IMG/VR virus record: IMGVR_UViG_3300029983_000007
Span: 1-64,000 of that record
DNA length: 64,000 bases
Direction: 5' to 3' (one strand)
How positions within the stretch are numbered: the stretch's first letter is position 1; each line of letters begins with the position of its first letter. Positions 1,411 through 59,510 of the stretch are shown piece by piece. Below the pieces are notes generated by a model. The model saw only the letters and a program-made list of their open reading frames with translations, made no database searches and had not been told where the DNA came from. The position numbers and the translations under genes were made by a program.

Positions 1411-2676
1411 ATGAAGAAATTAACTACAGAAGAATTTATACAGAAAGCAAAAAATGTACATGAAGATAAATATGATTATTCATTAGTTGAATATATAAAT
1501 TCATATACTAAGGTGAAAATAATATGTCCTACACACGGCATATTTGAACAAAAACCGAATGGTCATTTAGATAAAAAAGGTTGTTCAGAGTGTAGTGGTA
1601 ATAAGAAATTATCTAAAGATGAATTTATACAAAAATCAAAAAATATACATGGTAATAAATATAATTACAGTTTAGTGAATTATTTTAATTCTAAAACAAA
1701 AGTTAAAATTATATGCGAAAAACATGGCATTTTCGAACAAAATGCAAATAGTCATATTATAGGATATGAATGTTCAAAATGTAGTTATAATGATAGATAT
1801 GTATTTATTGAAAAATCTAAACAGATACATGGTAATAAATATGACTATTCTTTAGTTAATTATACAAATGCATTAAATAAAATAATTATAATATGTCCTG
1901 AACACGGTGAATTTACACAATTACCATATAATCATTTAAGTGGTAATGGTTGTAAAGAATGTTGCACATTAAATAAAAAATTAAAAATTGATGAATTTAT
2001 ACAAAAATCTATGGTTACACATGGAGATAAGTATGATTATTCTTTAGTTAATTATAAAGATAGTAAAACAAAAGTTAAAATTATATGCAAAAAACATGGG
2101 GTATTTGAACAAAAACCAAATGAACATTTAAATGGTAAAGGATGTGCAAGGTGTTTTAATACATTCAAATTAACAACAACTGAATTTATAATTAAATCAA
2201 AGGAAATACATGAAAATAAATACAATTACAGTTTGGTGAATTATGTTAATTCCAAAACAAAGGTTAAAATTATATGTTCTATACATGGCATTTTCGAACA
2301 AATACCTAATTGTCATACAGCACAAAAACAAGGATGCCCGATATGTAAAGAAAGTAAAGGTGAAAGAATTATTAGACAATTTTTATTGAAAAATAATATA
2401 ATTTTTATAACACAGAAAACATTTAGTAAATGTTTATCAGATAAAAATAAAAAGTTAAAATTTGATTTTTATTCAATAGACTATAATATGTGCATAGAAT
2501 ATGATGGTATTCAGCATTTTGAATCTGTTGAATATTGGGGAGGTGAAAAAGATTTCATAAAAAGACAAATGTATGATCAAATAAAAAACGAATATTGTTT
2601 AAAAAACAATATTCGTTTAATACGAATTAGATATGATGAAAATATAGAAGAAATACTAAATAGTTATTTTTTATAA
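1411..2676 (+). CDS. Homing endonuclease: five DUF723-like zinc repeats plus C-terminal PD-(D/E)XK/Vsr-like nuclease
   Basis: 5x YDYSLVxY...KVKIIC..HG.FEQ...H...GC..C; FDFY...IEYDGIQHF; ATG at 1411 follows the upstream stop (ORF track starts at 1378). Confidence 0.85.
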   Translation: MKKLTTEEFIQKAKNVHEDKYDYSLVEYINSYTKVKIICPTHGIFEQKPNGHLDKKGCSECSGNKKLSKDEFIQKSKNIHGNKYNYSLVNYFNSKTKVKIICEKHGIFEQNANSHIIGYECSKCSYNDRYVFIEKSKQIHGNKYDYSLVNYTNALNKIIIICPEHGEFTQLPYNHLSGNGCKECCTLNKKLKIDEFIQKSMVTHGDKYDYSLVNYKDSKTKVKIICKKHGVFEQKPNEHLNGKGCARCFNTFKLTTTEFIIKSKEIHENKYNYSLVNYVNSKTKVKIICSIHGIFEQIPNCHTAQKQGCPICKESKGERIIRQFLLKNNIIFITQKTFSKCLSDKNKKLKFDFYSIDYNMCIEYDGIQHFESVEYWGGEKDFIKRQMYDQIKNEYCLKNNIRLIRIRYDENIEEILNSYFL

Positions 2677-3851
2677 TTATTAATATGTATATATTTCATT
2701 GTTTCAACCATTGTAGGATCACCAATTGCCTTAATTGCATCATCTGATAACTTAACACAAGGAATTCCATTTGCACTAGTAAGTTTAATTACCATGTTCA
2801 TTGGTTTACTTTTTTCACATTTATTACTTTTTTTTGAAAAATCCGATGTCAGAAAAGTTCCAATTCCCATTGAACAACGTATTTTACCTTTACAATAGTC
2901 AACAATTTTTAAAGATCTATCAATATCTAAACCATTGCTATATACAATAATCTTAGTAGTTGGATCAATATTTAACTTTTTATAATGAGCAATCATTTTA
3001 TCAGTATAAGTATATTCTGATCCTGAATCCCAGCGTGTACCATCCCATAATTTTGAGTCTTCCAAAGAGAAATCTTTTAAGAATGAATCAATACCGAATG
3101 TATCTGGAAGCATAGTACCCAAATCTCCACTATAAGTTTGTTGCCATTTTTTCATAACAACTTTATTCGGATGATTCAAACTTTCTAATGCTGCTACACC
3201 TGAAATAATTTCATGAGCCAAAGTTCCTACGCATCTAACATCATGTTTCATAGATAGATACGGATTACTTGTGCCTACAAATACTGAATATTTTTTCAAT
3301 TCTCTAACAACCATATCTTGAACCGAGAAATCTCTCCTACGGCGAGTTCCAAAATCAGCTAATGATGCGCCAGCATCACTTAATGTTTTTCCTTTTGAAT
3401 TAATCAATTCAATTTGTCCATCCATACTCCAATCTTTATCCATCACTTTGAAGTACACTTCAGATATAATTGCCATCAATGGAACTTCCCATAATATTGT
3501 ATCTCTCCAAAAACCACTAATATTAATATTTAGTTCACCATTTTTTTCATGAGTAATATAAACTTGTTCAGGATTAAATCTGTAAGCCGCTAAATATTGA
3601 CGATAAGAAACTGGTAGATATTTAAATTTTTCTTTTAAAAAGTCATATTCTTCATCTGTTAATTTCAATTTAGACATCATATTGATTTGTTTTTTAATCA
3701 TTTTGAATGCTTCATCATTAAAAATCATAGATTTATCACGATTGCTAAATGTATATTCACATTCTACATCAGGGTAGTGCTGAATTACAAAATTTTGCAT
3801 ACTTAACTTGTAGATGTCAGTATCTAAGATACTTTTGATAATTTGCTTCAT
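2664..3851 (-). CDS. pncB: Nicotinate phosphoribosyltransferase
   Basis: SILDTDIYKLSM, DFGTRRR, GTSN, GTLAHE, LPDTFG, GTRWDSG and MVIKL motifs. Confidence 0.92.
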   Translation of the reverse strand: MKQIIKSILDTDIYKLSMQNFVIQHYPDVECEYTFSNRDKSMIFNDEAFKMIKKQINMMSKLKLTDEEYDFLKEKFKYLPVSYRQYLAAYRFNPEQVYITHEKNGELNINISGFWRDTILWEVPLMAIISEVYFKVMDKDWSMDGQIELINSKGKTLSDAGASLADFGTRRRRDFSVQDMVVRELKKYSVFVGTSNPYLSMKHDVRCVGTLAHEIISGVAALESLNHPNKVVMKKWQQTYSGDLGTMLPDTFGIDSFLKDFSLEDSKLWDGTRWDSGSEYTYTDKMIAHYKKLNIDPTTKIIVYSNGLDIDRSLKIVDYCKGKIRCSMGIGTFLTSDFSKKSNKCEKSKPMNMVIKLTSANGIPCVKLSDDAIKAIGDPTMVETMKYIHINNYKK

Positions 3852-3919: not shown

Positions 3920-4543
3920 TTATTTTTTTGAATATGGATTTTTACTTAAATAAGAATTATAATATTTCTTATTACTTGTAACTTCTTCTCCTAACCATTC
4001 TGGTTTTTCATAAGATTCATTTTCACTTTGAAGTTCAACCTCAGCCATTGTTAATCCTTCATTATCTCCATGAAATTCATCAACTTCAAATATATGATTT
4101 CCAACTTGAATATTATAACGAGTCTTATCAATTTTACCATCTCTACACAATAGAAGTAACTCTTTTGCCTCATCAACTAATATTTCTTTTTCAAACTCAT
4201 AACGAGATACACCAGTTTCATTAAGTTTACCTTTAATAGTTATATAGGCTTTATCACTTTTGATACGAATTCTAATAGAAGGATTTTCTGATATATATCC
4301 TTGAATAATATGATATTCATTAACAGCTAATGATTTATATTCACCTTTAACAAGAAATTTTCTTTCAATTTCTTGTGGCATAGGCTTTCTATCCATTTGT
4401 TTTAAAATTTTTTGTTGAATATCAATAATACACAATGTTATCTCATATATTCTATTTTTTATTTCTTCAGTTTGTTCTAGACTTTCAAGATATTTCAATC
4501 TACCATCCATACAATCATATATTTCTTTATACATTCCAATCAT
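3920..4543 (-). CDS. CYTH-domain protein (adenylate cyclase/triphosphatase fold); domain begins at Met55 (4381)
   Basis: EIERKFLV, RIRIK, FEKE, IDKTRY, FEVDEF, AEVE and KYYNSYL motifs. Confidence 0.88.
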   Translation of the reverse strand: MIGMYKEIYDCMDGRLKYLESLEQTEEIKNRIYEITLCIIDIQQKILKQMDRKPMPQEIERKFLVKGEYKSLAVNEYHIIQGYISENPSIRIRIKSDKAYITIKGKLNETGVSRYEFEKEILVDEAKELLLLCRDGKIDKTRYNIQVGNHIFEVDEFHGDNEGLTMAEVELQSENESYEKPEWLGEEVTSNKKYYNSYLSKNPYSKK

Positions 4544-5879: not shown

Positions 5880-6557
5880 TTAAATTACTTCAATTTCATC
5901 AGCAGAATTAACAACTACAATCCTACTACCAACACTATTGACTTTATATTTTTCAACTAAAGAATCTACATAGTTTTTAACATCTTCATCAGAGCCAATA
6001 CCTCGACAGCCACCAAGGTTAAGAATGACATCAAAACCAGCATCAAGCAAATCTTCAACTGTTGAACCTACACAGTAGTTTGTAGCTAATCCTGCTACAA
6101 TAACAGTATCAATATGTTTAGCTATATACCATTCAATAAGTCCTGTTGATATTTTTTTATTTAAGTCATGATAACAACTTGAATAAGGATGTAAATCTGG
6201 TTCAAATCCTTTTGCAACAAAGAAATCATACTCACACATTTTAGGAAGTCCTGCTATAAGTTCAGAACCAAATGTACCTGATATACAATGAGATTTCCAA
6301 GCAATGTCTACATTTTCTCCTTCTACTGGTGAAAATTGAGGTTGGCTATCATTAGCTATCCAAATTGAATTAATAGGATGCATATCTTTAGATACAGTCT
6401 TATATTTCACAAGATTATTTTGCTTATTCAATTCATCTACAATTTCATTACCACCTATTACAGGCAACTCATCTGGACACAATGGAGTAAATCCATTTTG
6501 AGGATCTACATTGTGGCTTGCTGTCAAATTTTTAAATACTGTTATTTTTTTATACAT
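5880..6557 (-). CDS. pncA: Nicotinamidase/pyrazinamidase
   Basis: VDPQNGF (catalytic Asp), D.H, W..HC, KG, and GLATNYCV (catalytic Cys). Confidence 0.9.
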   Translation of the reverse strand: MYKKITVFKNLTASHNVDPQNGFTPLCPDELPVIGGNEIVDELNKQNNLVKYKTVSKDMHPINSIWIANDSQPQFSPVEGENVDIAWKSHCISGTFGSELIAGLPKMCEYDFFVAKGFEPDLHPYSSCYHDLNKKISTGLIEWYIAKHIDTVIVAGLATNYCVGSTVEDLLDAGFDVILNLGGCRGIGSDEDVKNYVDSLVEKYKVNSVGSRIVVVNSADEIEVI

Positions 6558-8366: not shown

Positions 8367-8789
8367 ATGAAAACAGTTTTTAAAGTAAAATTAATAGACG
8401 GCGGTTGGGTATTTTGGAACCAATTTGGTATTATAATTAGTATTAGTACTGATAATGAAGGAATTCATTTAAATAAATATATTAGTCAATATAAAGTTAT
8501 TACTGAAACAGTATGTCAATTTACTGGGATAACTGATAAAAATAACATTGATATTTTTGAAAATGATTTATTATCAGATGGTAATATAATTTATAAAGTT
8601 GAATGGAATCAACAAAATACCTGTTGGTGGATTAATCCAATAAAAACAATAAAAAAATCTGAAATATCAGAAAAAGATAGTTTCATAACACTAGTACTAA
8701 GCAATGAAAAACTAGGAAATGGGTATTATTCAAGAAGAGATATGGAAGTAATAGGAAATACAATAGATGACTTAAACTTACTATCATAA
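8367..8789 (+). CDS. YopX-family protein
   Basis: TVCQFTGITDKN..DIFENDLL...EVIGN. Confidence 0.75.
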   Translation: MKTVFKVKLIDGGWVFWNQFGIIISISTDNEGIHLNKYISQYKVITETVCQFTGITDKNNIDIFENDLLSDGNIIYKVEWNQQNTCWWINPIKTIKKSEISEKDSFITLVLSNEKLGNGYYSRRDMEVIGNTIDDLNLLS

Positions 8790-10963: not shown

Positions 10964-11491
10964 ATGGCTAAACAAGAAATTAAAAACAAAATCAATAGAT
11001 TTATTACAAATCAAAGTGTTAGATTAGTTGGAGATAATGTTGAAAATTGTGTATTAGACACTAGAAAGGCACTTAGACTTGCTGATGAAATGGAATTAGA
11101 TTTAGTTGAAATATCATCTAATGATAACGTTTCTATATGTAAAATTGTTGATTATGAAAAATTTCTTTATGACAAAAAGAAAAAAGAAAAAGAACAAAAG
11201 AAAGTTCAAAAACAAAATCAAGCAGAGCTGAAAGAGATTAGAATGACTCCTAATATTGATGAGCATGATTTTAATTTTAAATTAACTCACGCAAAAAACT
11301 TTTTATCTGAAGGTAATAAAGTTTTACTATCAGTGTTTTTTAAAGGAAGAGAGATAGTGTATCAAGATCAAGGTAAAGTTAAACTATTGAAGTTTGTTGA
11401 AGCATTGGATGGTATTGGTATGGCAGAGTCTATGCCAAAATTAGAAGGTAAAAGAATGCAAATGACTATAAAACCAAAAAAGACAAAATAA
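10964..11491 (+). CDS. infC: Translation initiation factor IF-3
   Basis: VRLVG, ELDLVEIS, CKIVDYEKF, KEIRMTPNIDEHDF, FL..GNKV and PKLEGKRM motifs. Confidence 0.95.
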   Translation: MAKQEIKNKINRFITNQSVRLVGDNVENCVLDTRKALRLADEMELDLVEISSNDNVSICKIVDYEKFLYDKKKKEKEQKKVQKQNQAELKEIRMTPNIDEHDFNFKLTHAKNFLSEGNKVLLSVFFKGREIVYQDQGKVKLLKFVEALDGIGMAESMPKLEGKRMQMTIKPKKTK

Positions 11492-54947: not shown

Positions 54948-55027
54948 AACCTATGATGGGAGTCAAACCCACATTTACAACTTCAATTACAGTTACTTGA
55001 TTCGTAGTCAAGACTGGTTACATAGGC
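54948..55027 (-). ncRNA. D-armless tRNA-like RNA, anticodon ACG (Arg)
   Basis: Acceptor GCCTATG/CATAGGT; stem CTTGA/TCAAG with loop CTACGAA; T-arm GTGGG-TTTGACT-CCCAT; no D-arm. Confidence 0.7.
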
Positions 55028-55040
55028 ATATTATATCTAC

Positions 55041-55523
55041 TCATTTTTTTATAACAATATCTATATTTTCTAATTTTTCTTTTCTTGAGTATCTATATTT
55101 ATATTTATTAATACCTTCTATATCTGAATCTAAAAATTGTTCTATAAATTCTTCAGTTTGCATAGTAACATATTTTTTAGTACAATTTTCTTTATTGTCA
55201 CCATAATGACTAGTATCAAATCCTACTATCCAATAATTGTTGAATTTTTTATAATTTTCCTTTGTCACATCACCATCAATTTCTAAGCCTTCAGTCCAAT
55301 TTAAAAATGAATCAGAATCAAAAAATCGTCCATATGTTAATCCTCCATGTACACTTATGGTATTCATATCATCATATGAAACTTCATACAATGGATGATT
55401 AGTAGGTAATAATATATAACCATTCCCCCATCCAAATTCCATTATTAATGGATAATTTTGTATAGTAGATAAATGTTTAGTAAGATAATTCTCAACTATT
55501 AGTGTGTAAATTCCGTATTTCAT
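55041..55523 (-). CDS. Conserved phage protein (HGGLTY...GFD..H) with RKEKLENI tag
   Basis: WGNGY, VHGGLTY, WIVGFDTSHYGD. Confidence 0.65.
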   Translation of the reverse strand: MKYGIYTLIVENYLTKHLSTIQNYPLIMEFGWGNGYILLPTNHPLYEVSYDDMNTISVHGGLTYGRFFDSDSFLNWTEGLEIDGDVTKENYKKFNNYWIVGFDTSHYGDNKENCTKKYVTMQTEEFIEQFLDSDIEGINKYKYRYSRKEKLENIDIVIKK

Positions 55524-55543
55524 AATATTTTTTTATAATAAAA

Positions 55544-55574
55544 CAAATATACAAAAAAATTGTTATATATACAA
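55544..55574 (-). promoter_or_regulatory. Bacteroidota-type promoter
   Basis: Minus strand TTG-N20-TATATTTG. Confidence 0.6.
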
Positions 55575-55581
55575 CTTAAAA

Positions 55582-56106
55582 TTATATTTTTTCTTGAATA
55601 TTGTCAACATCTGTATCAACTATTTTCAAATCATCTTGTATGTCATCCACATGATCTGTTATATTGTCAACATCTGTGTCAACAGATTTTAAATTTTCTT
55701 GTATACCATCAATGTGATTTTTTATGTTGTCTACATCTGTATCAACATATTTTAATTCTACTTCTATATCATCAACATGATATTTTATATCATCTACATC
55801 AGTTCCTATGTGCTCAGTCATAACTTCTATTTTTTCAGATAACTCTGCTATCTTAGATATAATAGCATCAGTTCTACTTCCACTTATTTTAGCAATATAA
55901 CCTAAGACTGGTAAAGCAACTCCTTGAAAAAAAACAGAAACTATATATTGCATCCATGCAACTGTTCCTGATGGTTGACTAAAAAATAATGGAATTATAA
56001 CTAACAATGTTATTATCCAAAACATTGTCATACTAGATAATGAATCTGATAAAAAAATTGCAAATTTTTCTTGCGATGACTTTAATTTCTCAACTAATTT
56101 ATTCAT
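55582..56106 (-). CDS. DUF1003-like membrane protein with 21-aa C-terminal repeats
   Basis: Two TM helices, Q...LPV motif; repeats of DTDVDNI..H.D.IQ..LK.V; true start MNKLVEK at 56106. Confidence 0.6.
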   Translation of the reverse strand: MNKLVEKLKSSQEKFAIFLSDSLSSMTMFWIITLLVIIPLFFSQPSGTVAWMQYIVSVFFQGVALPVLGYIAKISGSRTDAIISKIAELSEKIEVMTEHIGTDVDDIKYHVDDIEVELKYVDTDVDNIKNHIDGIQENLKSVDTDVDNITDHVDDIQDDLKIVDTDVDNIQEKI

Positions 56107-56160
56107 ATATTTTTTATATTTATATATAAATAGTATAAATAATATTAATTTTTTTTTTTG

Positions 56161-56243
56161 TGGGACTAGTGGGGCTCGAACCCACAACCTCCGAAGAGAT
56201 CAGTTTTACAGACTGACATGACTACCTGTGTCATATTAATCCC
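56161..56243 (-). tRNA. tRNA-Tyr(GTA), long variable arm
   Basis: GGGATTA/TAGTCCC; TCAGT-CTGTAAA-ACTGA; TTCGAGC T-loop. Confidence 0.9.
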
Positions 56244-56252
56244 ATATTTTTG

Positions 56253-56377
56253 TGGTAGCAGATGGACTCGAACCACCAACTTCTGAGACATCGGCCCAGC
56301 ACTCTATCCTTCGCTCGTTTCAAATTATTTATTCTAGATTCATAATTATCCCCTTTGTGCTTTTGAGTTACACTACC
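56253..56377 (-). ncRNA. tRNA-like RNA with about 50-nt D-loop insertion, apparent anticodon GAT
   Basis: GGTAGTG/TGCTACC; D-stem ACTC/GAGT around a 60-nt loop; CTGGG-CCGATGT-CTCAG; GGTGG-TTCGAGT-CCATC. Confidence 0.65.
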
Positions 56378-56419
56378 TTTTTTTATTGTAATATTCTTTA
56401 TTTAATTTTTTATTGAGTG

Positions 56420-56498
56420 TACTGCCGAAGGGACTTGAACCCTCATACACCAATTACCTTGTTAATGACTGGATATAAGCCAGTGGGGATACGACAGT
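56420..56498 (-). ncRNA. D-armless tRNA-like RNA, anticodon TAT (Ile)
   Basis: ACTGTCG/CGGCAGT; ACTGG-CTTATAT-CCAGT; GAGGG-TTCAAGT-CCCTT. Confidence 0.7.
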
Positions 56499-56514
56499 GT
56501 ATTTATTTTTGTTG

Positions 56515-56591
56515 TTGGTGAAGTGGGACTTGAACCCACATGTGACCAATTAACCTTTCTACTACTTATCAGGCAGAGGGTATATTCACCA
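56515..56591 (-). ncRNA. D-armless tRNA-like RNA, anticodon GAT (Ile)
   Basis: TGGTGAA/TTCACCA; CTGC-CTGATAA-GTAG; GTGGG-TTCAAGT-CCCAC. Confidence 0.7.
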
Positions 56592-56602
56592 ATGTTATTT
56601 AG

Positions 56603-56676
56603 TAGTCTCGGTGAGACTTGAACTCACGATTTATTGCTTATCAGGCAATTGCTCTAACCAACTGAACTACAAGACT
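56603..56676 (-). tRNA. tRNA-Ile(GAT)
   Basis: Canonical cloverleaf; ATTGC-CTGATAA-GCAAT. Confidence 0.93.
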
Positions 56677-56716
56677 ATTTTAGTTTATTATTTTTTTATT
56701 GGTATGATACTATTTG

Positions 56717-56797
56717 AGCACATTGACAGACTCGAACTGTCGGTGTTTATATCTCGCTTTTGCAGAACGATGCCTTCGCCACTCAGACCAAATGTGC
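56717..56797 (-). tRNA. tRNA-Cys(GCA)
   Basis: GCACATT/AATGTGC; U73 discriminator; loop CTGCAAA; 12-nt variable region. Confidence 0.9.
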
Positions 56798-56806
56798 ATT
56801 TCTATT

Positions 56807-57682
56807 TTAAAAATTAATTTTTCTTCCTTTTGTCCAACCATTAAATATCCATTCATCTAATTCACATTTTTTAATTTTCTTGTTTTTATTGATATTTAAA
56901 TTATAAATCCAACAAGTATTAAATTGTGAATTTTTATTTCCTTTTTGTTGTATTGAATTTTTTTCTCCAATTTTACGTTTCGTTTCATCAGTAATTTTTC
57001 TGCCAGAAAAAATATGCTTTAATTCACCAGATAAATATCGAGGATCATTTGTTGATACGTTTAATGTATTATTTTTATTGTCTTTAACCGTAATAAATCC
57101 TTTCTTGTGAAATATTAATTCACCAGATAAATATCTTGGATCATCAATAGAAACTCTAATTTTTTCGTTGTTTTTATTTTTAACAACAACAAAACCTTTA
57201 CCAACACACTGAAATTCACCTGATAAATATCTTGGATCTTCTGAATTCACAGATAATGTATTATTATCTTTGTCTTTAACCATAATCAATCCTTTCATTA
57301 TACTTACCAATTCACCTGATAAATACCTTGGATCTGTTTTATGTACTGATAATGTATTGTTATCTTTATCTTTAACAGTAATCAAATTATATGAATTAAA
57401 TCCTCCTCCACCTAATATTATATTATAAGTATTACCATTTTTAATAAATTCATCATTTACCAATTCTTTTTCTTTTTCCAACATTTTTTCTTTATCATCA
57501 AAATTAAATAACACAATTTTTTCAAAATTTTCAACTCCAAATTCTTTTATAGCTTTTTTAATATTAGATCCAGAACCCATATATTTATCATGTATGTTTT
57601 CTGTAATATGAATACCAATATAAATTTTATTATTTAACTTATTTGTTATTTGATAAACTATATAATATTTTTTATTTTCCAT
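56807..57682 (-). CDS. GIY-YIG homing endonuclease (Seg-like) with internal repeats, inside the tRNA array
   Basis: YIVYQITN..N.KIYIGIH...Y.GSG; 4x V..DDPRYLSGE repeats; NUMOD3-like end. Confidence 0.85.
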   Translation of the reverse strand: MENKKYYIVYQITNKLNNKIYIGIHITENIHDKYMGSGSNIKKAIKEFGVENFEKIVLFNFDDKEKMLEKEKELVNDEFIKNGNTYNIILGGGGFNSYNLITVKDKDNNTLSVHKTDPRYLSGELVSIMKGLIMVKDKDNNTLSVNSEDPRYLSGEFQCVGKGFVVVKNKNNEKIRVSIDDPRYLSGELIFHKKGFITVKDNKNNTLNVSTNDPRYLSGELKHIFSGRKITDETKRKIGEKNSIQQKGNKNSQFNTCWIYNLNINKNKKIKKCELDEWIFNGWTKGRKINF

Positions 57683-57751
57683 AAGTCGAACTTTTTATCA
57701 CTATATATAAAAAGTTCGATATCAATTTTATTAATATTTATTTATTTTTAG

Positions 57752-57838
57752 TACCGTTAGGTGGAATCGAACCACCGCAATCTATAAGACTGAAAGGTTT
57801 ATGAGACCTCCGTAATAACCAACTCTACTCATAACGGT
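57752..57838 (-). tRNA. tRNA with CAT anticodon (elongator Met or Ile2), long variable arm
   Basis: ACCGTTA/TAACGGT; GAGGT-CTCATAA-ACCTT; variable stem AGTC/GATT. Confidence 0.8.
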
Positions 57839-57911
57839 ATATTTATGTTTAAATATATAGTTAATATCATACTAATAGTATGATATTGTTAAATATTTTA
57901 AACTATTTTTG

Positions 57912-57985
57912 CGGGAAAGTTGAGATTTGAACTCAAGACACTTTGCTTAACAGGCAAACGCTCTAACCAACTGAGCTACATTCCC
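57912..57985 (-). tRNA. tRNA-Asn(GTT)
   Basis: Canonical; TTTGC-CTGTTAA-GCAAA. Confidence 0.93.
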
Positions 57986-57990
57986 TTATG

Positions 57991-58078
57991 CGCACTGGGT
58001 AGGATTTGAACCTACGGTGGAGATTACTCTCACTGGATTAACAGTCCAGACTTTTCGACCAACTAAAGCAACCAATGC
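57991..58078 (-). tRNA. tRNA-Asn(GTT), long variable arm
   Basis: GCATTGG/CCAGTGC; CTGGA-CTGTTAA-TCCAG; variable stem GAG-TAAT-CTC. Confidence 0.88.
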
Positions 58079-58080
58079 AT

Positions 58081-58117
58081 ATAATAACTTAATAATAACT
58101 TAATAATAACTTAATAA
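58081..58117. repeat. 11-bp tandem repeat (3 copies) in a tRNA spacer
   Basis: ATAATAACTTA x3. Confidence 0.85.
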
Positions 58118-58119
58118 AG

Positions 58120-58194
58120 CGGACTATAACGGTTACGGTCCGTTAATTTTACTTGAGTGACAGTCAAGTTCTCCACCAAGGAGCCTAATAATCC
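58120..58194 (-). tRNA. tRNA-Asp(GTC) with non-canonical T-loop
   Basis: GGATTAT/ATAGTCC; CTTGA-CTGTCAC-TCAAG; AACGG-ACCGTAA-CCGTT. Confidence 0.8.
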
Positions 58195-58201
58195 ATTTTT
58201 G

Positions 58202-58286
58202 TACTGGTAACGGGGTTCGAACCCGTGAGGAAATTTCTTTCCACAACATTGAAAGTGTTGCGACCTAGCCACTAGTCCATACCAGC
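58202..58286 (-). tRNA. tRNA-Glu(TTC), long variable arm
   Basis: GCTGGTA/TACCAGT; CAACA-CTTTCAA-TGTTG; variable stem GGAAA-GAAA-TTTCC. Confidence 0.88.
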
Positions 58287-58296
58287 ATTTTATTAG

Positions 58297-58373
58297 CGGA
58301 TTATATCGGGCTCAAACCGACTTCCTCAACCGTGACAGGGTTGTATGCAAAGTATCACTCACACCTATAATCC
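58297..58373 (-). tRNA. tRNA-Asp(GTC)
   Basis: GGATTAT/ATAATCC; CAACC-CTGTCAC-GGTTG; TTTGAGC T-loop. Confidence 0.85.
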
Positions 58374-58382
58374 ATTTTTTTG

Positions 58383-58453
58383 TGGGATAGGAGGTAATCG
58401 AAACCTCGTAGTTATGATTTACAGTCATTCTAAGTAACCCTGACCTCTATCCC
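58383..58453 (-). tRNA. tRNA-Tyr(GTA), short variable arm
   Basis: GGGATAG/CTATCCC; ATGA-CTGTAAA-TCAT; GAGGT-TTCGATT-ACCTC. Confidence 0.82.
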
Positions 58454-58487
58454 ATTTATTCATTATCCAGTATTTCAAAGATCATTT

Positions 58488-58532
58488 AAAAACAAAAAAC
58501 TCAGTTCTTATTTTTAAGAACTGAGTTTTTTT
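58488..58532 (-). terminator. Attenuator terminator ahead of the tRNA array
   Basis: Transcript AAAAAAA-CTCAGTTCTT-AAAAAT-AAGAACTGAG-TTTTTTGTTTTT. Confidence 0.85.
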
Positions 58533-58557
58533 ATTATTCACATAATAATTTATATAC

Positions 58558-58689
58558 TTATCCAGTTCTTCCTACATTATTTTCATCATCATTAATATAA
58601 TCATTAATCATATCAATACATATCTCTTCCATATTGTAATTGATATTACAATTGCGATAAATGCTATATATGTTATTAATGTTATTCAT
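58558..58689 (-). CDS. Putative attenuator leader peptide (43 aa)
   Basis: MNNINNIYSIYRNCNINYNMEEICIDMINDYINDDENNVGRTG; last codons complementary to the terminator 5' arm. Confidence 0.75.
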   Translation of the reverse strand: MNNINNIYSIYRNCNINYNMEEICIDMINDYINDDENNVGRTG

Positions 58690-58718
58690 GATATTTACTT
58701 TTACTTTGTTTTTATTTG

Positions 58719-58789
58719 TTGCGGACGTCTGATTCAAACAGCGACTATGGGTTATGAGCCCATTGAGATATCATTTCTCCACCTCCGCG
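58719..58789 (-). tRNA. Initiator tRNA-fMet(CAT), copy 2
   Basis: C1:A72 mismatch; ATGGG-CTCATAA-CCCAT with three G-C pairs; irregular T-stem. Confidence 0.8.
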
Positions 58790-58805
58790 ATATTTTTTTT
58801 ATTTG

Positions 58806-58876
58806 TTGCGGACGTCTGATTCAAACAGCGACTATGGGTTATGAGCCCATTGAGATATCATTTCTCCACCTCCGCG
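58806..58876 (-). tRNA. Initiator tRNA-fMet(CAT), copy 1 (identical, 87-bp period)
   Basis: Exact duplicate of 58719..58789. Confidence 0.8.
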
Positions 58877-58883
58877 ATATATT

Positions 58884-59510
58884 TTAATTTTTTCTGTTTC
58901 TATGATACAATTTTAGTGATTCTGAAATCTTTATTTTAGTTTCATCTGAAATTTTACTTTTATTTACTGTTTTATATGAATCAGACATTTTTTTCTTACT
59001 TTCATCTGATACAAAATGATTTTTTAATTTATTAGATATTTTATTTCTTTCTTCTTCAGATTCAAATCTTTTTTTAGCTGAATCTGACAATTTCTTTCTT
59101 GTTTCTTCTGATACAATTCTACATTTTAAAGATTCTGAAATCTTTTTCTTCGATTCATCAGAAAAAATTTTACCTATTGATGATTCTTTTAATTTATTTT
59201 TAGTTTCATCACTATGTTTTTTACCTTTAAAATGTGGACCACCTTCTCCTCCAATTCCTATATTATAATTTCTTTTTGATTTTATAAAATCTTCTGTTAT
59301 AATTTCTTTTTCTTTTTTATTCATTTCTGATTCATTATCAAAAATAAACAAAATTTCTTTTTTGAAATTTTCCTTACCATGCAATTTAATTGCATTTTCT
59401 AAGGCTTTACCAGAACCATAATAAGAATCATTTGTATTTTCAGTTTGATGCTTTCCAATATAATACTTATCATTTAATATATTTGTTGTTTTATAAATTG
59501 TATAGTACAA
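58884..59510 (-). CDS. GIY-YIG homing endonuclease with NUMOD3 repeats
   Basis: YTIYKTTN..N.KYYIGKH...Y.GSG; repeated S.ET..K.S.S; TTG start. Confidence 0.85.
   Translation of the reverse strand: MYYTIYKTTNILNDKYYIGKHQTENTNDSYYGSGKALENAIKLHGKENFKKEILFIFDNESEMNKKEKEIITEDFIKSKRNYNIGIGGEGGPHFKGKKHSDETKNKLKESSIGKIFSDESKKKISESLKCRIVSEETRKKLSDSAKKRFESEEERNKISNKLKNHFVSDESKKKMSDSYKTVNKSKISDETKIKISESLKLYHRNRKN

What the first reader, a model, noticed from the sequence alone, without database searches (positions are those of the whole stretch)
56253..56377. tRNA-like RNA with an SD plus mini-ORF inside its D-loop
Seen: all four stems are present, but the D-loop is 60 nt long. It contains AAGGGG followed 6 nt later by ATG AAT CTA GAA TAA (Met-Asn-Leu-Glu-stop, 56329-56343) inside an AATTAT/ATAATT hairpin. 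The anticodon loop CCGATGT has C33 and G37, which is atypical for Ile(GAT). Inference: it may be a D-loop intron-containing tRNA, a tRNA-mRNA hybrid or a decoy. The mini-ORF may be chance.
Basis: partly seen in the sequence, partly recalled or inferred. Interest (0 to 1): 0.68.

Follow-up and report, generated by a model that had tools for sequence, protein, structure and literature searches.

The report
Phage tRNA-Ile gene with giant D-loop
A huge, AT-rich phage carries a complete tRNA-Ile(GAU)-type cloverleaf with 51 extra bases in its D-loop; the extra piece is well conserved in four related phages, but the supposed ribosome-binding site and four-codon ORF inside it look like chance.

Summary
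Window 56253-56377 (minus strand) is a 125-nt tRNA-like gene. Rfam's tRNA model scores it 39 bits (threshold 29). All four stems are present, the D-loop is 60 nt, and the anticodon loop is CCGAUGU (GAU with C33, G37, U38).

It sits in a minus-strand cluster of about 17 tRNA(-like) genes in a 25 %-GC huge phage full of homing endonuclease genes.

The SD/mini-ORF reading fails. Only 4 of 62 ORF starts here have any SD-like motif. The SD + ATG + stop pattern appears in 8 % of shuffles of the loop, and the AU hairpin in 7 %.

No known intron type fits: no bulge-helix-bulge motif, no Rfam ribozyme or group I hit, and the insert is too short for group I.

The core tertiary residues are all kept. The insert lies between D-loop nt 17 and G18. 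Across four phage lineages only 3 of 125 positions vary, with no indels, and both changes outside the insert keep their base pair. The neighbouring tRNA-Tyr and the spacers vary more.

An unrelated 462-kb phage has a tRNA-Asp(GUC) with an insert at the same spot.

Best reading (0.42): a maintained, non-canonical tRNA-Ile-type RNA whose D-loop expansion is retained. Main rival (0.28): a young pseudogene.

The parts
56253..56377 (-). Whole 125-nt tRNA-Ile(GAU)-type gene with an expanded D-loop
   Evidence: Rfam RF00005 scores it 39 bits, covering model positions 1-71. My strict cloverleaf finder also picks it up.
56371..56377 (-). Acceptor stem, 5' strand (GGUAGUG)
   Evidence: Pairs 7/7 with 56254-56260, including 2 G-U.
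56365..56368 (-). D-stem, 5' strand (ACUC)
   Evidence: Pairs 4/4 with GAGU at 56301-56304.
56305..56364 (-). 60-nt D-loop. A14, A15, G18, G19 and A21 are kept at its two ends.
   Evidence: Read from the sequence. The Rfam alignment shows 57 inserted nt.
56310..56360 (-). Approximately 51 nt of extra sequence between D-loop nt 17 and G18. The exact boundary is ambiguous within an AAG microrepeat.
   Evidence: One substitution in four phage lineages and no indel. It is not repeated elsewhere in the window. It has no predicted stable fold.
56350..56355 (-).
   Evidence: Present. SD motifs are not used by this genome's genes.
56329..56343 (-). Mini-ORF ATG AAT CTA GAA TAA, judged to be chance
   Evidence: The pattern occurs in 7.9 % of shuffles. 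Codon 2 is AAA (Lys) in L010.
56301..56304 (-). D-stem, 3' strand (GAGU)
56283..56299 (-). Anticodon arm CUGGG-CCGAUGU-CUCAG. The anticodon GAU is at 56290-56292; the loop has C33, G37 and U38.
56261..56277 (-). T-arm GGUGG-UUCGAGU-CCAUC
   Evidence: In L010 G50 becomes A, turning a G-U pair into A-U.
56253..56260 (-). Acceptor stem 3' strand (UGCUACC) plus discriminator A73. No CCA is encoded; the trailer begins CAAAAA, as in most of the neighbouring tRNA genes.
   Evidence: In L112 A70 becomes G, turning U3-A70 into U3-G70.
56160..56243 (-). tRNA-Tyr(GTA), 10 nt downstream. It travels together with the element in all four lineages.
   Evidence: ARAGORN.
56602..56676 (-). Canonical tRNA-Ile(GAT) paralogue, 225 nt upstream
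   Evidence: ARAGORN and Rfam at 69.7 bits.
56807..57682 (-). SegB-like GIY-YIG homing endonuclease gene inside the tRNA cluster
   Evidence: Pfam GIY-YIG; phrog_314; blastn similarity to T4-type segB.

Best explanation
This is a diverged extra copy of the phage's tRNA-Ile(GAU) gene. About 51 A/U-rich nucleotides were inserted into the solvent-exposed alpha region of the D-loop, between nt 17 and G18.

Proposed mechanism (all inferred):
- It is transcribed with the minus-strand tRNA cluster.
- Its ends are cut like those of its neighbours: RNase P at the 5' end, trimming at the 3' end, then CCA addition, since no CCA is encoded.
- It folds into the normal L-shape because every core contact residue is kept.
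- The extra 51 nt loop out near the elbow and stay in the mature RNA.
- It is not an mRNA.

Proposed role (inferred): it is one of several structurally disguised Ile-type tRNAs of this phage. The others are the canonical tRNA-Ile(GAU), a GAU form without a D-arm, and a UAU form without a D-arm. Together they would keep the very heavy Ile decoding going, or soak up host enzymes that attack tRNA. The changed anticodon loop (C33, G37, U38) and the bulky D-loop would make it a poor substrate for host tRNA-targeting nucleases.

Shown: the anatomy, the retained core residues, the conservation pattern, and the absence of known intron signatures.
Inferred: transcription, processing, retention of the insert, and the role.
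For: - It is a complete cloverleaf at 39 bits against a threshold of 29.
- Deleting the insert in silico restores an ARAGORN tRNA-Ile call.
- U8, A14, the A15-U48 pair, G18, G19, A21, G26 and the T-loop UUCGAGU are all present; the insert lies exactly between nt 17 and G18.
- Conservation in four lineages (window, L010, L100, L112) whose flanking proteins are 68-77 % identical:
  - the insert has 1 variable site in 57 nt and no indel;
  - the rest of the gene has 2 variable sites, both pair-preserving (G-U to A-U; U-A to U-G);
  - the adjacent tRNA-Tyr has about 8 variable sites in 84 nt;
  - the neighbouring D-arm-less gene at 56422-56500 has 6 in 79 nt;
  - the spacers carry substitutions, a 29-nt indel and a whole HNH endonuclease gene inserted 6 nt upstream of the element, without touching it.
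- The 3' trailer begins CAAAAA, as in most of the neighbouring tRNA genes.
- An independent parallel exists: LR756500.1 (462 kb) has a 137-nt tRNA-Asp(GUC) with a 64-nt insert at the same D-loop position, a G15-C48 pair and a canonical anticodon loop.
- The clade keeps other non-canonical tRNAs under clear structural selection: in the D-arm-less family, 16 of 17 pairs show compensatory changes.
- Ile makes up 9.9 % of codons, and ATT 4.7 %.
- Phage tRNAs with altered anticodon loops are proposed to escape host anticodon nucleases (PMC10264068). Host systems that cut tRNA bodies are known (PMC13096335, PMC12445682).
Against: - C33 replaces the near-universal U33, and G37/U38 replace the A37/A38 expected for an ANN-reading tRNA. 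Efficient decoding and IleRS charging are therefore doubtful.
- A D-loop of 60 nt is unknown in functional tRNAs; a review of non-canonical tRNAs gives D-loops of 4-11 nt (PMC7609411).
- The insert has no predicted stable structure; the z-score of the whole RNA is +0.9.
- The element is absent from the next relatives (L009, L102) and from more distant ones.
- The four carriers share a nearly identical block, which may have been spread recently by endonuclease-driven recombination. Sequence identity is then weak proof of selection.
- There are no expression data.
Confidence: 0.42

Rival explanations
1. It is a young pseudogene. A redundant tRNA-Ile(GAU) copy was disrupted by a 51-nt insertion, a by-product of endonuclease-driven breakage and repair in the cluster. 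It is already decaying in its anticodon loop. It looks conserved only because the whole block spread recently between phages.
For: - C33, G37 and U38.
- ARAGORN rejects it.
- An intact tRNA-Ile(GAT) lies 225 nt upstream.
- It is restricted to four closely related lineages and absent in L009 and L102.
- The region is a hotspot of homing endonuclease activity: GIY-YIG genes at 56807-57682 and 58884-59510, an HNH gene inserted next to it in L100, and an 87-bp tandem duplication at 58709-58885.
- T4 SegB cuts inside tRNA genes and drives their rearrangement (PMC2330249, PMC13096335).
- The insert is unstructured.
Against: - All 21 stem pairs and all tertiary-contact residues are intact.
- It is the least variable segment of its block: 3 of 125 sites, against about 8 of 84 in the adjacent functional tRNA-Tyr.
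- It has no indels although the spacers around it are full of them.
- Both changes outside the insert keep their base pair.
- Compact phage genomes tend to delete useless DNA.
Confidence: 0.28
2. The 51 nt are an intron of a new kind for viruses of bacteria. It would be cut out and the halves ligated by phage or host enzymes, giving a 74-nt tRNA-Ile(GAU).
For: - The two halves join into a complete tRNA that ARAGORN accepts.
- The insert sequence is conserved.
- Other tRNA genes of related phages carry inserts of about 65 nt. L005 has one in the D-loop. L049 and L055 have one in the anticodon loop, where decoding would need its removal.
Against: - None of these genes has a bulge-helix-bulge motif.
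- There is no group I or small-ribozyme hit, and 51 nt is far too short for group I.
- No RNA ligase or splicing endonuclease was found among the window ORFs scanned, though only 64 kb of at least 330 kb is visible.
- No protein-dependent tRNA splicing is known in bacteria (background knowledge).
- The spliced product would still have C33 and G37.
Confidence: 0.12
3. It is a tRNA-mRNA hybrid. The AAGGGG motif recruits ribosomes and the Met-Asn-Leu-Glu mini-ORF is translated, or acts as a peptidyl-tRNA drop-off minigene.
For: AAGGGG, then 6 nt, then an ATG and an in-frame TAA are present and are retained in all four lineages.
Against: - Only 4 of 62 ORF starts in this genome have any SD-like motif, so SD-led initiation is not the rule here.
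- The pattern arises in 7.9 % of shuffles.
- The only substitution in the insert is non-synonymous.
- The analogous inserts in L005 and L054 lack such a feature.
- No tmRNA is called.
Confidence: 0.03
4. The insert carries a DNA-level signal, such as an internal promoter or terminator for tRNA-Tyr and the downstream membrane-protein gene, or an endonuclease target or immunity site. In that case it would not be an RNA feature.
For: - The insert contains AATAAATA-like A/T motifs that resemble T4-type late promoters.
- The element and tRNA-Tyr always travel together.
Against: - Such A/T motifs occur 50 or more times in the window.
- The sigma-70-type scan gives no more sites than shuffles do, and finds no terminator in the insert.
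- T4 SegB recognises the T-arm, not the D-loop (PMC2330249).
Confidence: 0.05

Closest known systems
Canonical bacterial/phage tRNA-Ile(GAU) (Rfam RF00005)
   Same: It has the four stems and the 7-nt anticodon loop with GAU. It keeps the T-loop UUCGAGU, U8, A14, the R15-Y48 pair, G18, G19 and A73. It lies in a phage tRNA cluster.
   Different: The D-loop is 60 nt instead of 4-11 nt. The loop has C33 instead of U33, and G37/U38 instead of A37/A38. ARAGORN does not call it.
Phage T4 RNA C (species 1 RNA, about 140 nt), a stable RNA of unknown function at the end of the T4 tRNA cluster near segB
   Same: It is an over-long RNA with tRNA-like ends in a phage tRNA cluster that also holds a SegB-type endonuclease gene. 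T4 RNA C is made late in infection and its function is still unknown (PMC9697503).
   Different: There is no sequence similarity. The T4-type RNA C region has only an acceptor stem and a T-arm, and does not match the tRNA model; its best hit is tRNA-Sec at 17 bits, E = 1.3. The window element is a full cloverleaf.
Archaeal and red-algal/nucleomorph tRNA genes with introns at non-canonical positions, including the D-loop
   Same: An intervening sequence of tens of nucleotides interrupts the D-loop of an otherwise complete tRNA.
   Different: Those introns are defined by a bulge-helix-bulge motif cut by the splicing endonuclease. No such motif is present here, and the carrier is a phage with T4-like features and a genome that makes no use of SD sequences.
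tmRNA (the known tRNA-mRNA hybrid)
   Same: It combines a tRNA-like part with a short open reading frame.
   Different: tmRNA lacks an anticodon arm, its ORF sits between pseudoknots and has no start codon, and it encodes a degradation tag. ARAGORN and Rfam find no tmRNA here.
Phage tRNAs with anticodon-loop changes proposed to resist host anticodon nucleases (PMC10264068; PARIS PMC11464382; retron/Septu PMC11555353, PMC13096335)
   Same: It is a phage-encoded duplicate of a heavily used tRNA whose anticodon loop departs from the consensus.
   Different: The described cases are otherwise canonical tRNAs. None has a D-loop expansion. No host nuclease is known for this system.
tRNA-Asp(GUC) with a D-loop insert in uncultured huge phage LR756500.1
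   Same: The insert lies at the same place, between nt 16/17 and G18G19. The cloverleaf and Levitt pair are intact. A second tRNA gene with the same anticodon lies within 1 kb. It is flanked by homing endonuclease genes.
   Different: That insert is 64 nt, is unrelated in sequence and is predicted to be well structured. Its anticodon loop is canonical. Rfam gives only a local 23.7-bit hit.

Membership tests
tRNA (Rfam RF00005) | Covariance-model score at or above the gathering threshold over the full model | tested here: met
   39.0 bits against 29, model positions 1-71.
tRNA (Rfam RF00005) | Four stems plus the core tertiary residues (U8, A14, R15-Y48, G18, G19, A21, T-loop TTCRA) | tested here: met
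   Stems of 7, 4, 5 and 5 bp are all paired. The residues were read from the sequence.
tRNA (Rfam RF00005) | D-loop of normal size (4-11 nt) | tested here: not met
   The D-loop is 60 nt. The normal range is taken from PMC7609411.
Decoding tRNA-Ile(GAU) | Anticodon loop with U33 and A37 (t6A) / A38 | tested here: not met
   The loop is CCGAUGU, with C33, G37 and U38.
Decoding tRNA-Ile(GAU) | Aminoacylation by IleRS and use on the ribosome | not testable with these tools
   This needs charging assays or tRNA-seq.
tRNA with a bulge-helix-bulge (archaeal/eukaryal-type) intron | A helix-bulge(3)-helix(4)-bulge(3)-helix motif spanning the two splice sites | tested here: not met
   There were no hits with outer helices of at least 3 bp. 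The single hit at 2 bp lies outside the insert, and such hits occur in 84 % of shuffles.
tRNA with a bulge-helix-bulge (archaeal/eukaryal-type) intron | A splicing endonuclease and RNA ligase available | tested here: inconclusive
   None was found among the roughly 44 of 74 window ORFs of at least 100 aa that were scanned. Only 64 kb of a genome of at least 330 kb is visible.
Group I intron in a tRNA gene | A P1-P9 catalytic core of about 200 nt or more, typically in the anticodon loop | tested here: not met
   The insert is 51-57 nt and lies in the D-loop. No Rfam intron hit appeared even at E up to 1.
Small self-cleaving ribozymes (hammerhead, twister, HDV-like and others) | A match to a curated covariance model | tested here: not met
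   No such family appeared in the E up to 1 scan of 55500-59500.
tmRNA | A tRNA-like domain without an anticodon arm, plus a tag-encoding ORF | tested here: not met
   ARAGORN and Rfam find no tmRNA, and an anticodon arm is present.
T4 RNA C / species 1 RNA | Sequence or structure homology to the T4-type RNA | tested here: not met
   blastn of the element against 50,697 phage records gave no match. The T4-type RNA C region does not fit the tRNA model.
SD-led protein-coding minigene | A functional ribosome-binding site in the style of the genome's own genes | tested here: not met
   4 of 62 ORF starts have any SD-like motif; leaders are A/T-only.

The most novel reading that the evidence does not exclude
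Huge phages of this clade deliberately diversify the architecture of their tRNAs. The variants are D-loop expansions at nt 17, tRNAs without a D-arm, and extra variable arms on class-I tRNAs. On this reading the D-loop-expanded tRNA-Ile is a working member of that toolkit. It would either be a decoder or decoy that host tRNA-cutting defence nucleases cannot recognise, or carry the first protein-dependent tRNA intron of a bacterial virus.
Probability: 0.2. Interest if true: 0.75.

Novelty: new variant of a known kind. Interest (0 to 1): 0.42.

Why it matters
Phage tRNAs are now seen as weapons against host defences that cut tRNA. Examples are PARIS, Septu/retron, OLD, Schlafen-type nucleases and anticodon nucleases.

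If a tRNA can carry 51 extra nucleotides in its D-loop and still be made and kept, three things follow:
- The known limits of tRNA architecture would widen.
- It would provide a natural insertion-tolerant site for RNA engineering.
- Together with the D-arm-less and extra-arm tRNAs beside it, it would point to structural disguise as a counter-defence strategy.

If it is only a pseudogene, it still documents how homing endonucleases remodel phage tRNA clusters. It also warns that SD-plus-mini-ORF patterns in AT-rich, SD-free genomes are noise.

Tried and rejected
- **More homologues of the element.** Exact and degenerate DNA pattern scans of IMG/VR found only the two lineages already known; all other 15-mer hits were chance matches in coding DNA. 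blastn against 50,697 phage records gave no match. A scan of GTDB genomes for the T-arm plus acceptor 3' strand gave no match, so no host or ancestral tRNA was identified.
- **Insert as a multi-copy mobile element.** No second copy exists in the window; the longest matches are 12 nt or less.
- **Insert pairing in trans with other RNAs of the cluster.** I noticed GGGGAUA complementary to the UAUCCCC linker of the D-arm-less gene at 56422-56500. RNAduplex energies are not better than shuffles for any partner; all z-scores are above -1.1.
- **Insert derived from the extra region of the D-arm-less family.** Local alignment scores are not significant (p of 0.09 or more).
- **Promoter or terminator in the insert.** The consensus scan finds no more sites than shuffles do, and A/T motifs are ubiquitous.
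- **Shared motif AGAAUAAAU between the window insert and the L005 insert.** My rough estimate is that a 9-mer shared by chance has about 8 % probability, so this is not used as evidence.
- **Relatives of the L005 and L049/L055 insert-bearing tRNAs, sought for covariation.** Only the same contigs came back.
- **Thermodynamic stability.** The MFE z-score is +0.9, and the cloverleaf is not the MFE fold. This is uninformative for a tRNA.
- **Open frame through the insert.** A 17-codon open frame runs through the insert in another frame. This is expected in about 1 in 5 cases per frame at this composition, and it has no start codon.

Full report
**1. What is there**

On the minus strand of 56253-56377 lies a 125-nt sequence that folds as a complete tRNA cloverleaf:
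- a 7-bp acceptor stem;
- U8 and A9;
- a 4-bp D-stem (ACUC/GAGU);
- a 5-bp anticodon stem with the loop CCGAUGU;
- a 5-nt variable loop;
- a 5-bp T-stem with the loop UUCGAGU;
- discriminator A.

Rfam's tRNA model aligns it end to end at 39.0 bits (gathering score 29) and reports 57 inserted bases in the D-loop. ARAGORN does not call it. When I delete the extra bases in silico, ARAGORN calls tRNA-Ile(GAT) for a wide range of deletion end-points.

**2. Context**

- The window has 25 % GC and is densely packed with short ORFs.
- It encodes a family-B DNA polymerase fragment, a primase, IF3, NAPRTase, a DNA methylase and many HNH and GIY-YIG homing endonucleases.
- The same tRNA region occurs on a 330-kb IMG/VR contig. 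The neighbouring protein is on record on a 711-kb contig. This is a huge phage.
- The element is one of about 17 tRNA or tRNA-like genes on the minus strand between 54948 and 58875.
- A SegB-like GIY-YIG gene (56807-57682) interrupts the cluster, and another bounds it (58884-59510).
- T4 SegB recognises the T-arm motif of tRNA genes, cuts inside them, and drives preferential inheritance and segmental amplification of tRNA regions (PMC2330249, PMC13096335). An 87-bp tandem duplication carrying a tRNA(CAT) at 58709-58885 fits that picture.

**3. The SD and mini-ORF**

- I listed the 22 bases upstream of 62 ORF starts. Only 4 contain any SD-like tetramer; the leaders are almost pure A/T. This phage-host system evidently does not rely on Shine-Dalgarno pairing.
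- An SD-like motif followed by ATG and an in-frame stop appears in 7.9 % of shuffles of the D-loop. A perfect 6-bp hairpin appears in 6.7 %.
- The only substitution found in the insert changes the second codon from Asn to Lys.
- The inserts of other long tRNA genes (L005, L054) have no comparable feature.
- No tmRNA is detected.

I conclude that the SD/mini-ORF is chance and that the tRNA-mRNA hybrid reading is not supported.

**4. Is it an intron?**

- At 51-57 nt the insert is far below group I size.
- No intron or self-cleaving ribozyme family matches, even at E up to 1.
- A direct search for the bulge-helix-bulge motif across the boundaries found none. This holds here and in the four other long tRNA genes found in relatives. 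Relaxed hits are as common as in shuffles.
- No RNA ligase or splicing endonuclease is among the roughly 44 of 74 window ORFs of at least 100 aa that I scanned. Most of the genome is out of view.

Splicing therefore has no positive support, but it cannot be excluded.

**5. Where the insert sits**

The D-loop begins A14 A15 A16 A17 and ends G18 G19 A U A21. The following residues are all in place:
- U8;
- the A15-U48 Levitt pair;
- G26;
- T-loop U54 U55 C56.

The extra 51 nt therefore occupy exactly the alpha region of the D-loop. From established tRNA structure, this region varies in length and points to solvent. The boundaries share an AAG microrepeat, so the exact junction is ambiguous. The insert has no convincing fold of its own.

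**6. Relatives**

I used the neighbouring genes to fetch loci from IMG/VR, JGI metagenomes and Logan assemblies. The element turned up in four lineages whose flanking proteins are 68-77 % identical:

| Lineage | Difference from the window element |
|---|---|
| Window | (reference) |
| L010 | 2 substitutions: one in the insert; T-stem G50 to A |
| L100 | none |
| L112 | 1 substitution: acceptor A70 to G |

- The T-stem change turns G-U into A-U, and the acceptor change turns U-A into U-G. Both keep the base pair.
- The insert has one variable site in 57 nt and no indel.
- By comparison, the adjacent tRNA-Tyr has about 8 variable sites in 84 nt. The D-arm-less gene at 56422-56500 has 6 in 79 nt. 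The spacer upstream of the element measures 14, 15 or 43 nt, or holds a whole HNH endonuclease gene ending 6 nt before the element.
- At a spacer-like or Tyr-like rate of about 10 % variable sites, seeing at most one variable site in 57 nt has a probability of about 0.02 (my arithmetic).
- The element is absent from L009 (Ile-GAU, canonical Ile-UAU, then Tyr), from L102 and from more distant relatives.

Caveat: the block from the first D-arm-less gene to tRNA-Tyr is nearly identical in the carriers, whereas the tRNA-Ile and tRNA-Cys genes just upstream differ. Recent endonuclease-mediated exchange could therefore explain part of the identity.

**7. Parallels**

A strict cloverleaf finder run over about 1 Mb of fetched loci found a D-loop longer than 13 nt in only two families:
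- this element;
- a 137-nt tRNA-Asp(GUC) in the unrelated 462-kb phage LR756500.1.

The LR756500.1 gene has its insert at the same place. It keeps G15-C48 and a canonical anticodon loop, and its insert is predicted to be structured. It sits between two homing endonuclease genes, next to a second tRNA-Asp. Rfam gives it only a local 23.7-bit hit.

Relatives L049 and L055 carry a tRNA with a normal D-arm and an insert of about 65 nt in the anticodon loop.

The clade also maintains two other kinds of non-canonical tRNA:
- tRNA-like genes without a D-arm, with canonical GAU, UAU, ACG or UCG loops; 16 of 17 pairs show compensatory changes;
- class-I tRNAs with extra variable arms.

Non-canonical tRNA architecture is therefore a maintained feature of these phages, not just decay.

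**8. Interpretation**

I rank the readings as follows.

(a) **0.42 - retained expansion.** This is a maintained, non-canonical tRNA-Ile(GAU)-type RNA. It is processed like its neighbours and keeps the D-loop expansion as a looped-out appendage. It may be a nuclease-resistant decoder or a decoy, in a genome where Ile is 9.9 % of codons. This fits current ideas on phage tRNAs versus host tRNA-cutting defences (PMC10264068, PMC11464382, PMC13096335). Transcription, processing, retention of the insert and the role are all inferred.

(b) **0.28 - young pseudogene.** The gene would have been created by the endonuclease-driven turnover of the cluster.

(c) **0.12 - a new intron type.**

(d) **0.05 - a DNA-level signal.**

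(e) **0.03 - a translated minigene.**

**9. Comparison with known things**

- It is a member of the tRNA family by the covariance model. It fails two features of a standard decoding tRNA: D-loop size and U33/A37.
- It resembles T4 RNA C in being an over-long tRNA-like RNA in a SegB-containing tRNA cluster with no known function (PMC9697503). It is not homologous to it.
- It resembles archaeal D-loop-intron tRNAs in gene layout only.
- A review of non-canonical tRNAs lists no tRNA with such a D-loop and does not mention phage (PMC7609411).

I rate it a new variant of a known kind. It is of moderate interest, and the interest rises if the retained-expansion or intron reading is confirmed by RNA data.

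Noticed in passing
window 56514-56591 (-), 56422-56500 (-), 54948-55027 (-); also L049 1521-1602, L053 6944-7024 and 7031-7113, L054 183-262 and 277-356, L102 595-676 and 687-765, L052 1388-1465: A conserved family of tRNA-like genes without a D-arm. Each has a 7-bp acceptor stem, a 7-8 nt linker, a canonical anticodon arm (GAU, UAU, ACG or UCG), a 21-27 nt extra region with a ..GUAAUUGGU.. motif, and a T-arm. RNAalifold finds 17 pairs, 16 of them with compensatory double changes, and no D-stem. I know of no description of tRNAs without a D-arm in phages.
   Followed up: partly
window 58201-58286, 57990-58078, 57751-57838, 56716-56797 (all -); likewise in L013, L049, L055: tRNAs with class-I anticodons (Glu UUC, Asn GUU, Met CAU, Cys GCA) carry 10-16 nt hairpin-forming extra variable arms. 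In relative L009 the Glu and Cys genes are of normal length. The extra arms recur across the clade.
   Followed up: partly
window ~58115-58195 (-) and ~58295-58380 (-): Two further tRNA-like genes begin with GGAUUAU and carry CUGUCAC (Asp GUC) anticodon loops. One has a non-standard T-loop and the other an odd D region. Neither ARAGORN nor Rfam calls them. The first is conserved in L009 at 8535-8612.
   Followed up: no
window 58709-58885 (-): An 87-bp tandem duplication (2.0 copies, 98 % identical) carries a 69-nt tRNA(CAT) with a shortened T-loop. It lies next to a GIY-YIG endonuclease gene and is reminiscent of SegB-driven segmental amplification of tRNA genes.
   Followed up: partly
L100 2076-2663: In one relative an HNH homing endonuclease gene (phrog_2255) is inserted 6 nt upstream of the element, in the spacer that is 14-43 nt long in the other lineages. 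This spacer is a hotspot of genetic exchange.
   Followed up: partly
L049 1786-1918 and L055 8230-8367: A tRNA gene with a canonical D-arm has an insert of about 65 nt in the anticodon loop (Rfam 49.7 bits). The two phages share a conserved UAAUCU/AGAUUA hairpin and a UUAACCGC motif in the insert. There is no bulge-helix-bulge motif, and the insert is too short for group I.
   Followed up: partly
L005 4801-4937 (LR756500.1 86244-86380): A 137-nt tRNA-Asp(GUC) in an unrelated 462-kb phage has a structured 64-nt insert at the same D-loop position. It is flanked by two homing endonuclease genes and lies next to a second tRNA-Asp.
   Followed up: partly
L054 548-669 and 671-912: A 122-nt tRNA-like RNA has an acceptor stem, a T-arm and a 5-bp D-like stem enclosing two hairpins. 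It is followed by about 240 nt of structured-looking sequence and another odd tRNA-like gene that shares the motif GAGGAUUCUG. This is unexplained.
   Followed up: no
window 10964-11491 (+): The phage encodes translation initiation factor IF3 (both Pfam domains, E = 1e-30 and 1e-23).
   Followed up: no
window 2664-3851 (-), 3920-4543 (-), 5880-6557 (-): A NAD-salvage-like set of genes: nicotinate phosphoribosyltransferase, a CYTH-domain protein and an isochorismatase/nicotinamidase-like protein.
   Followed up: no
window 23642-25003 (+) and 25092-26075 (+): An ORF with only part of the family-B DNA polymerase domain is followed directly by a homing endonuclease gene (phrog_3339). The polymerase gene may be split by a mobile element. 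HNH endonuclease genes also lie at 1378-2676 and 20915-21997.
   Followed up: no
whole window, ORF starts: Genes lack Shine-Dalgarno motifs (4 of 62 starts) and have A/T-only leaders. One exception is the HNH endonuclease gene at 20915, which is preceded by GGAGG. This suggests a host with SD-independent initiation, possibly Bacteroidota (my inference, not tested).
   Followed up: partly
window 55582-56106 (-): A membrane protein with a 63-bp repeat (VDTDVDNI motif) lies next to the tRNA cluster. The exact protein is on record on a contig of 711,471 bp, so the phage genome may be far larger than the 330-kb IMG/VR contig.
   Followed up: no
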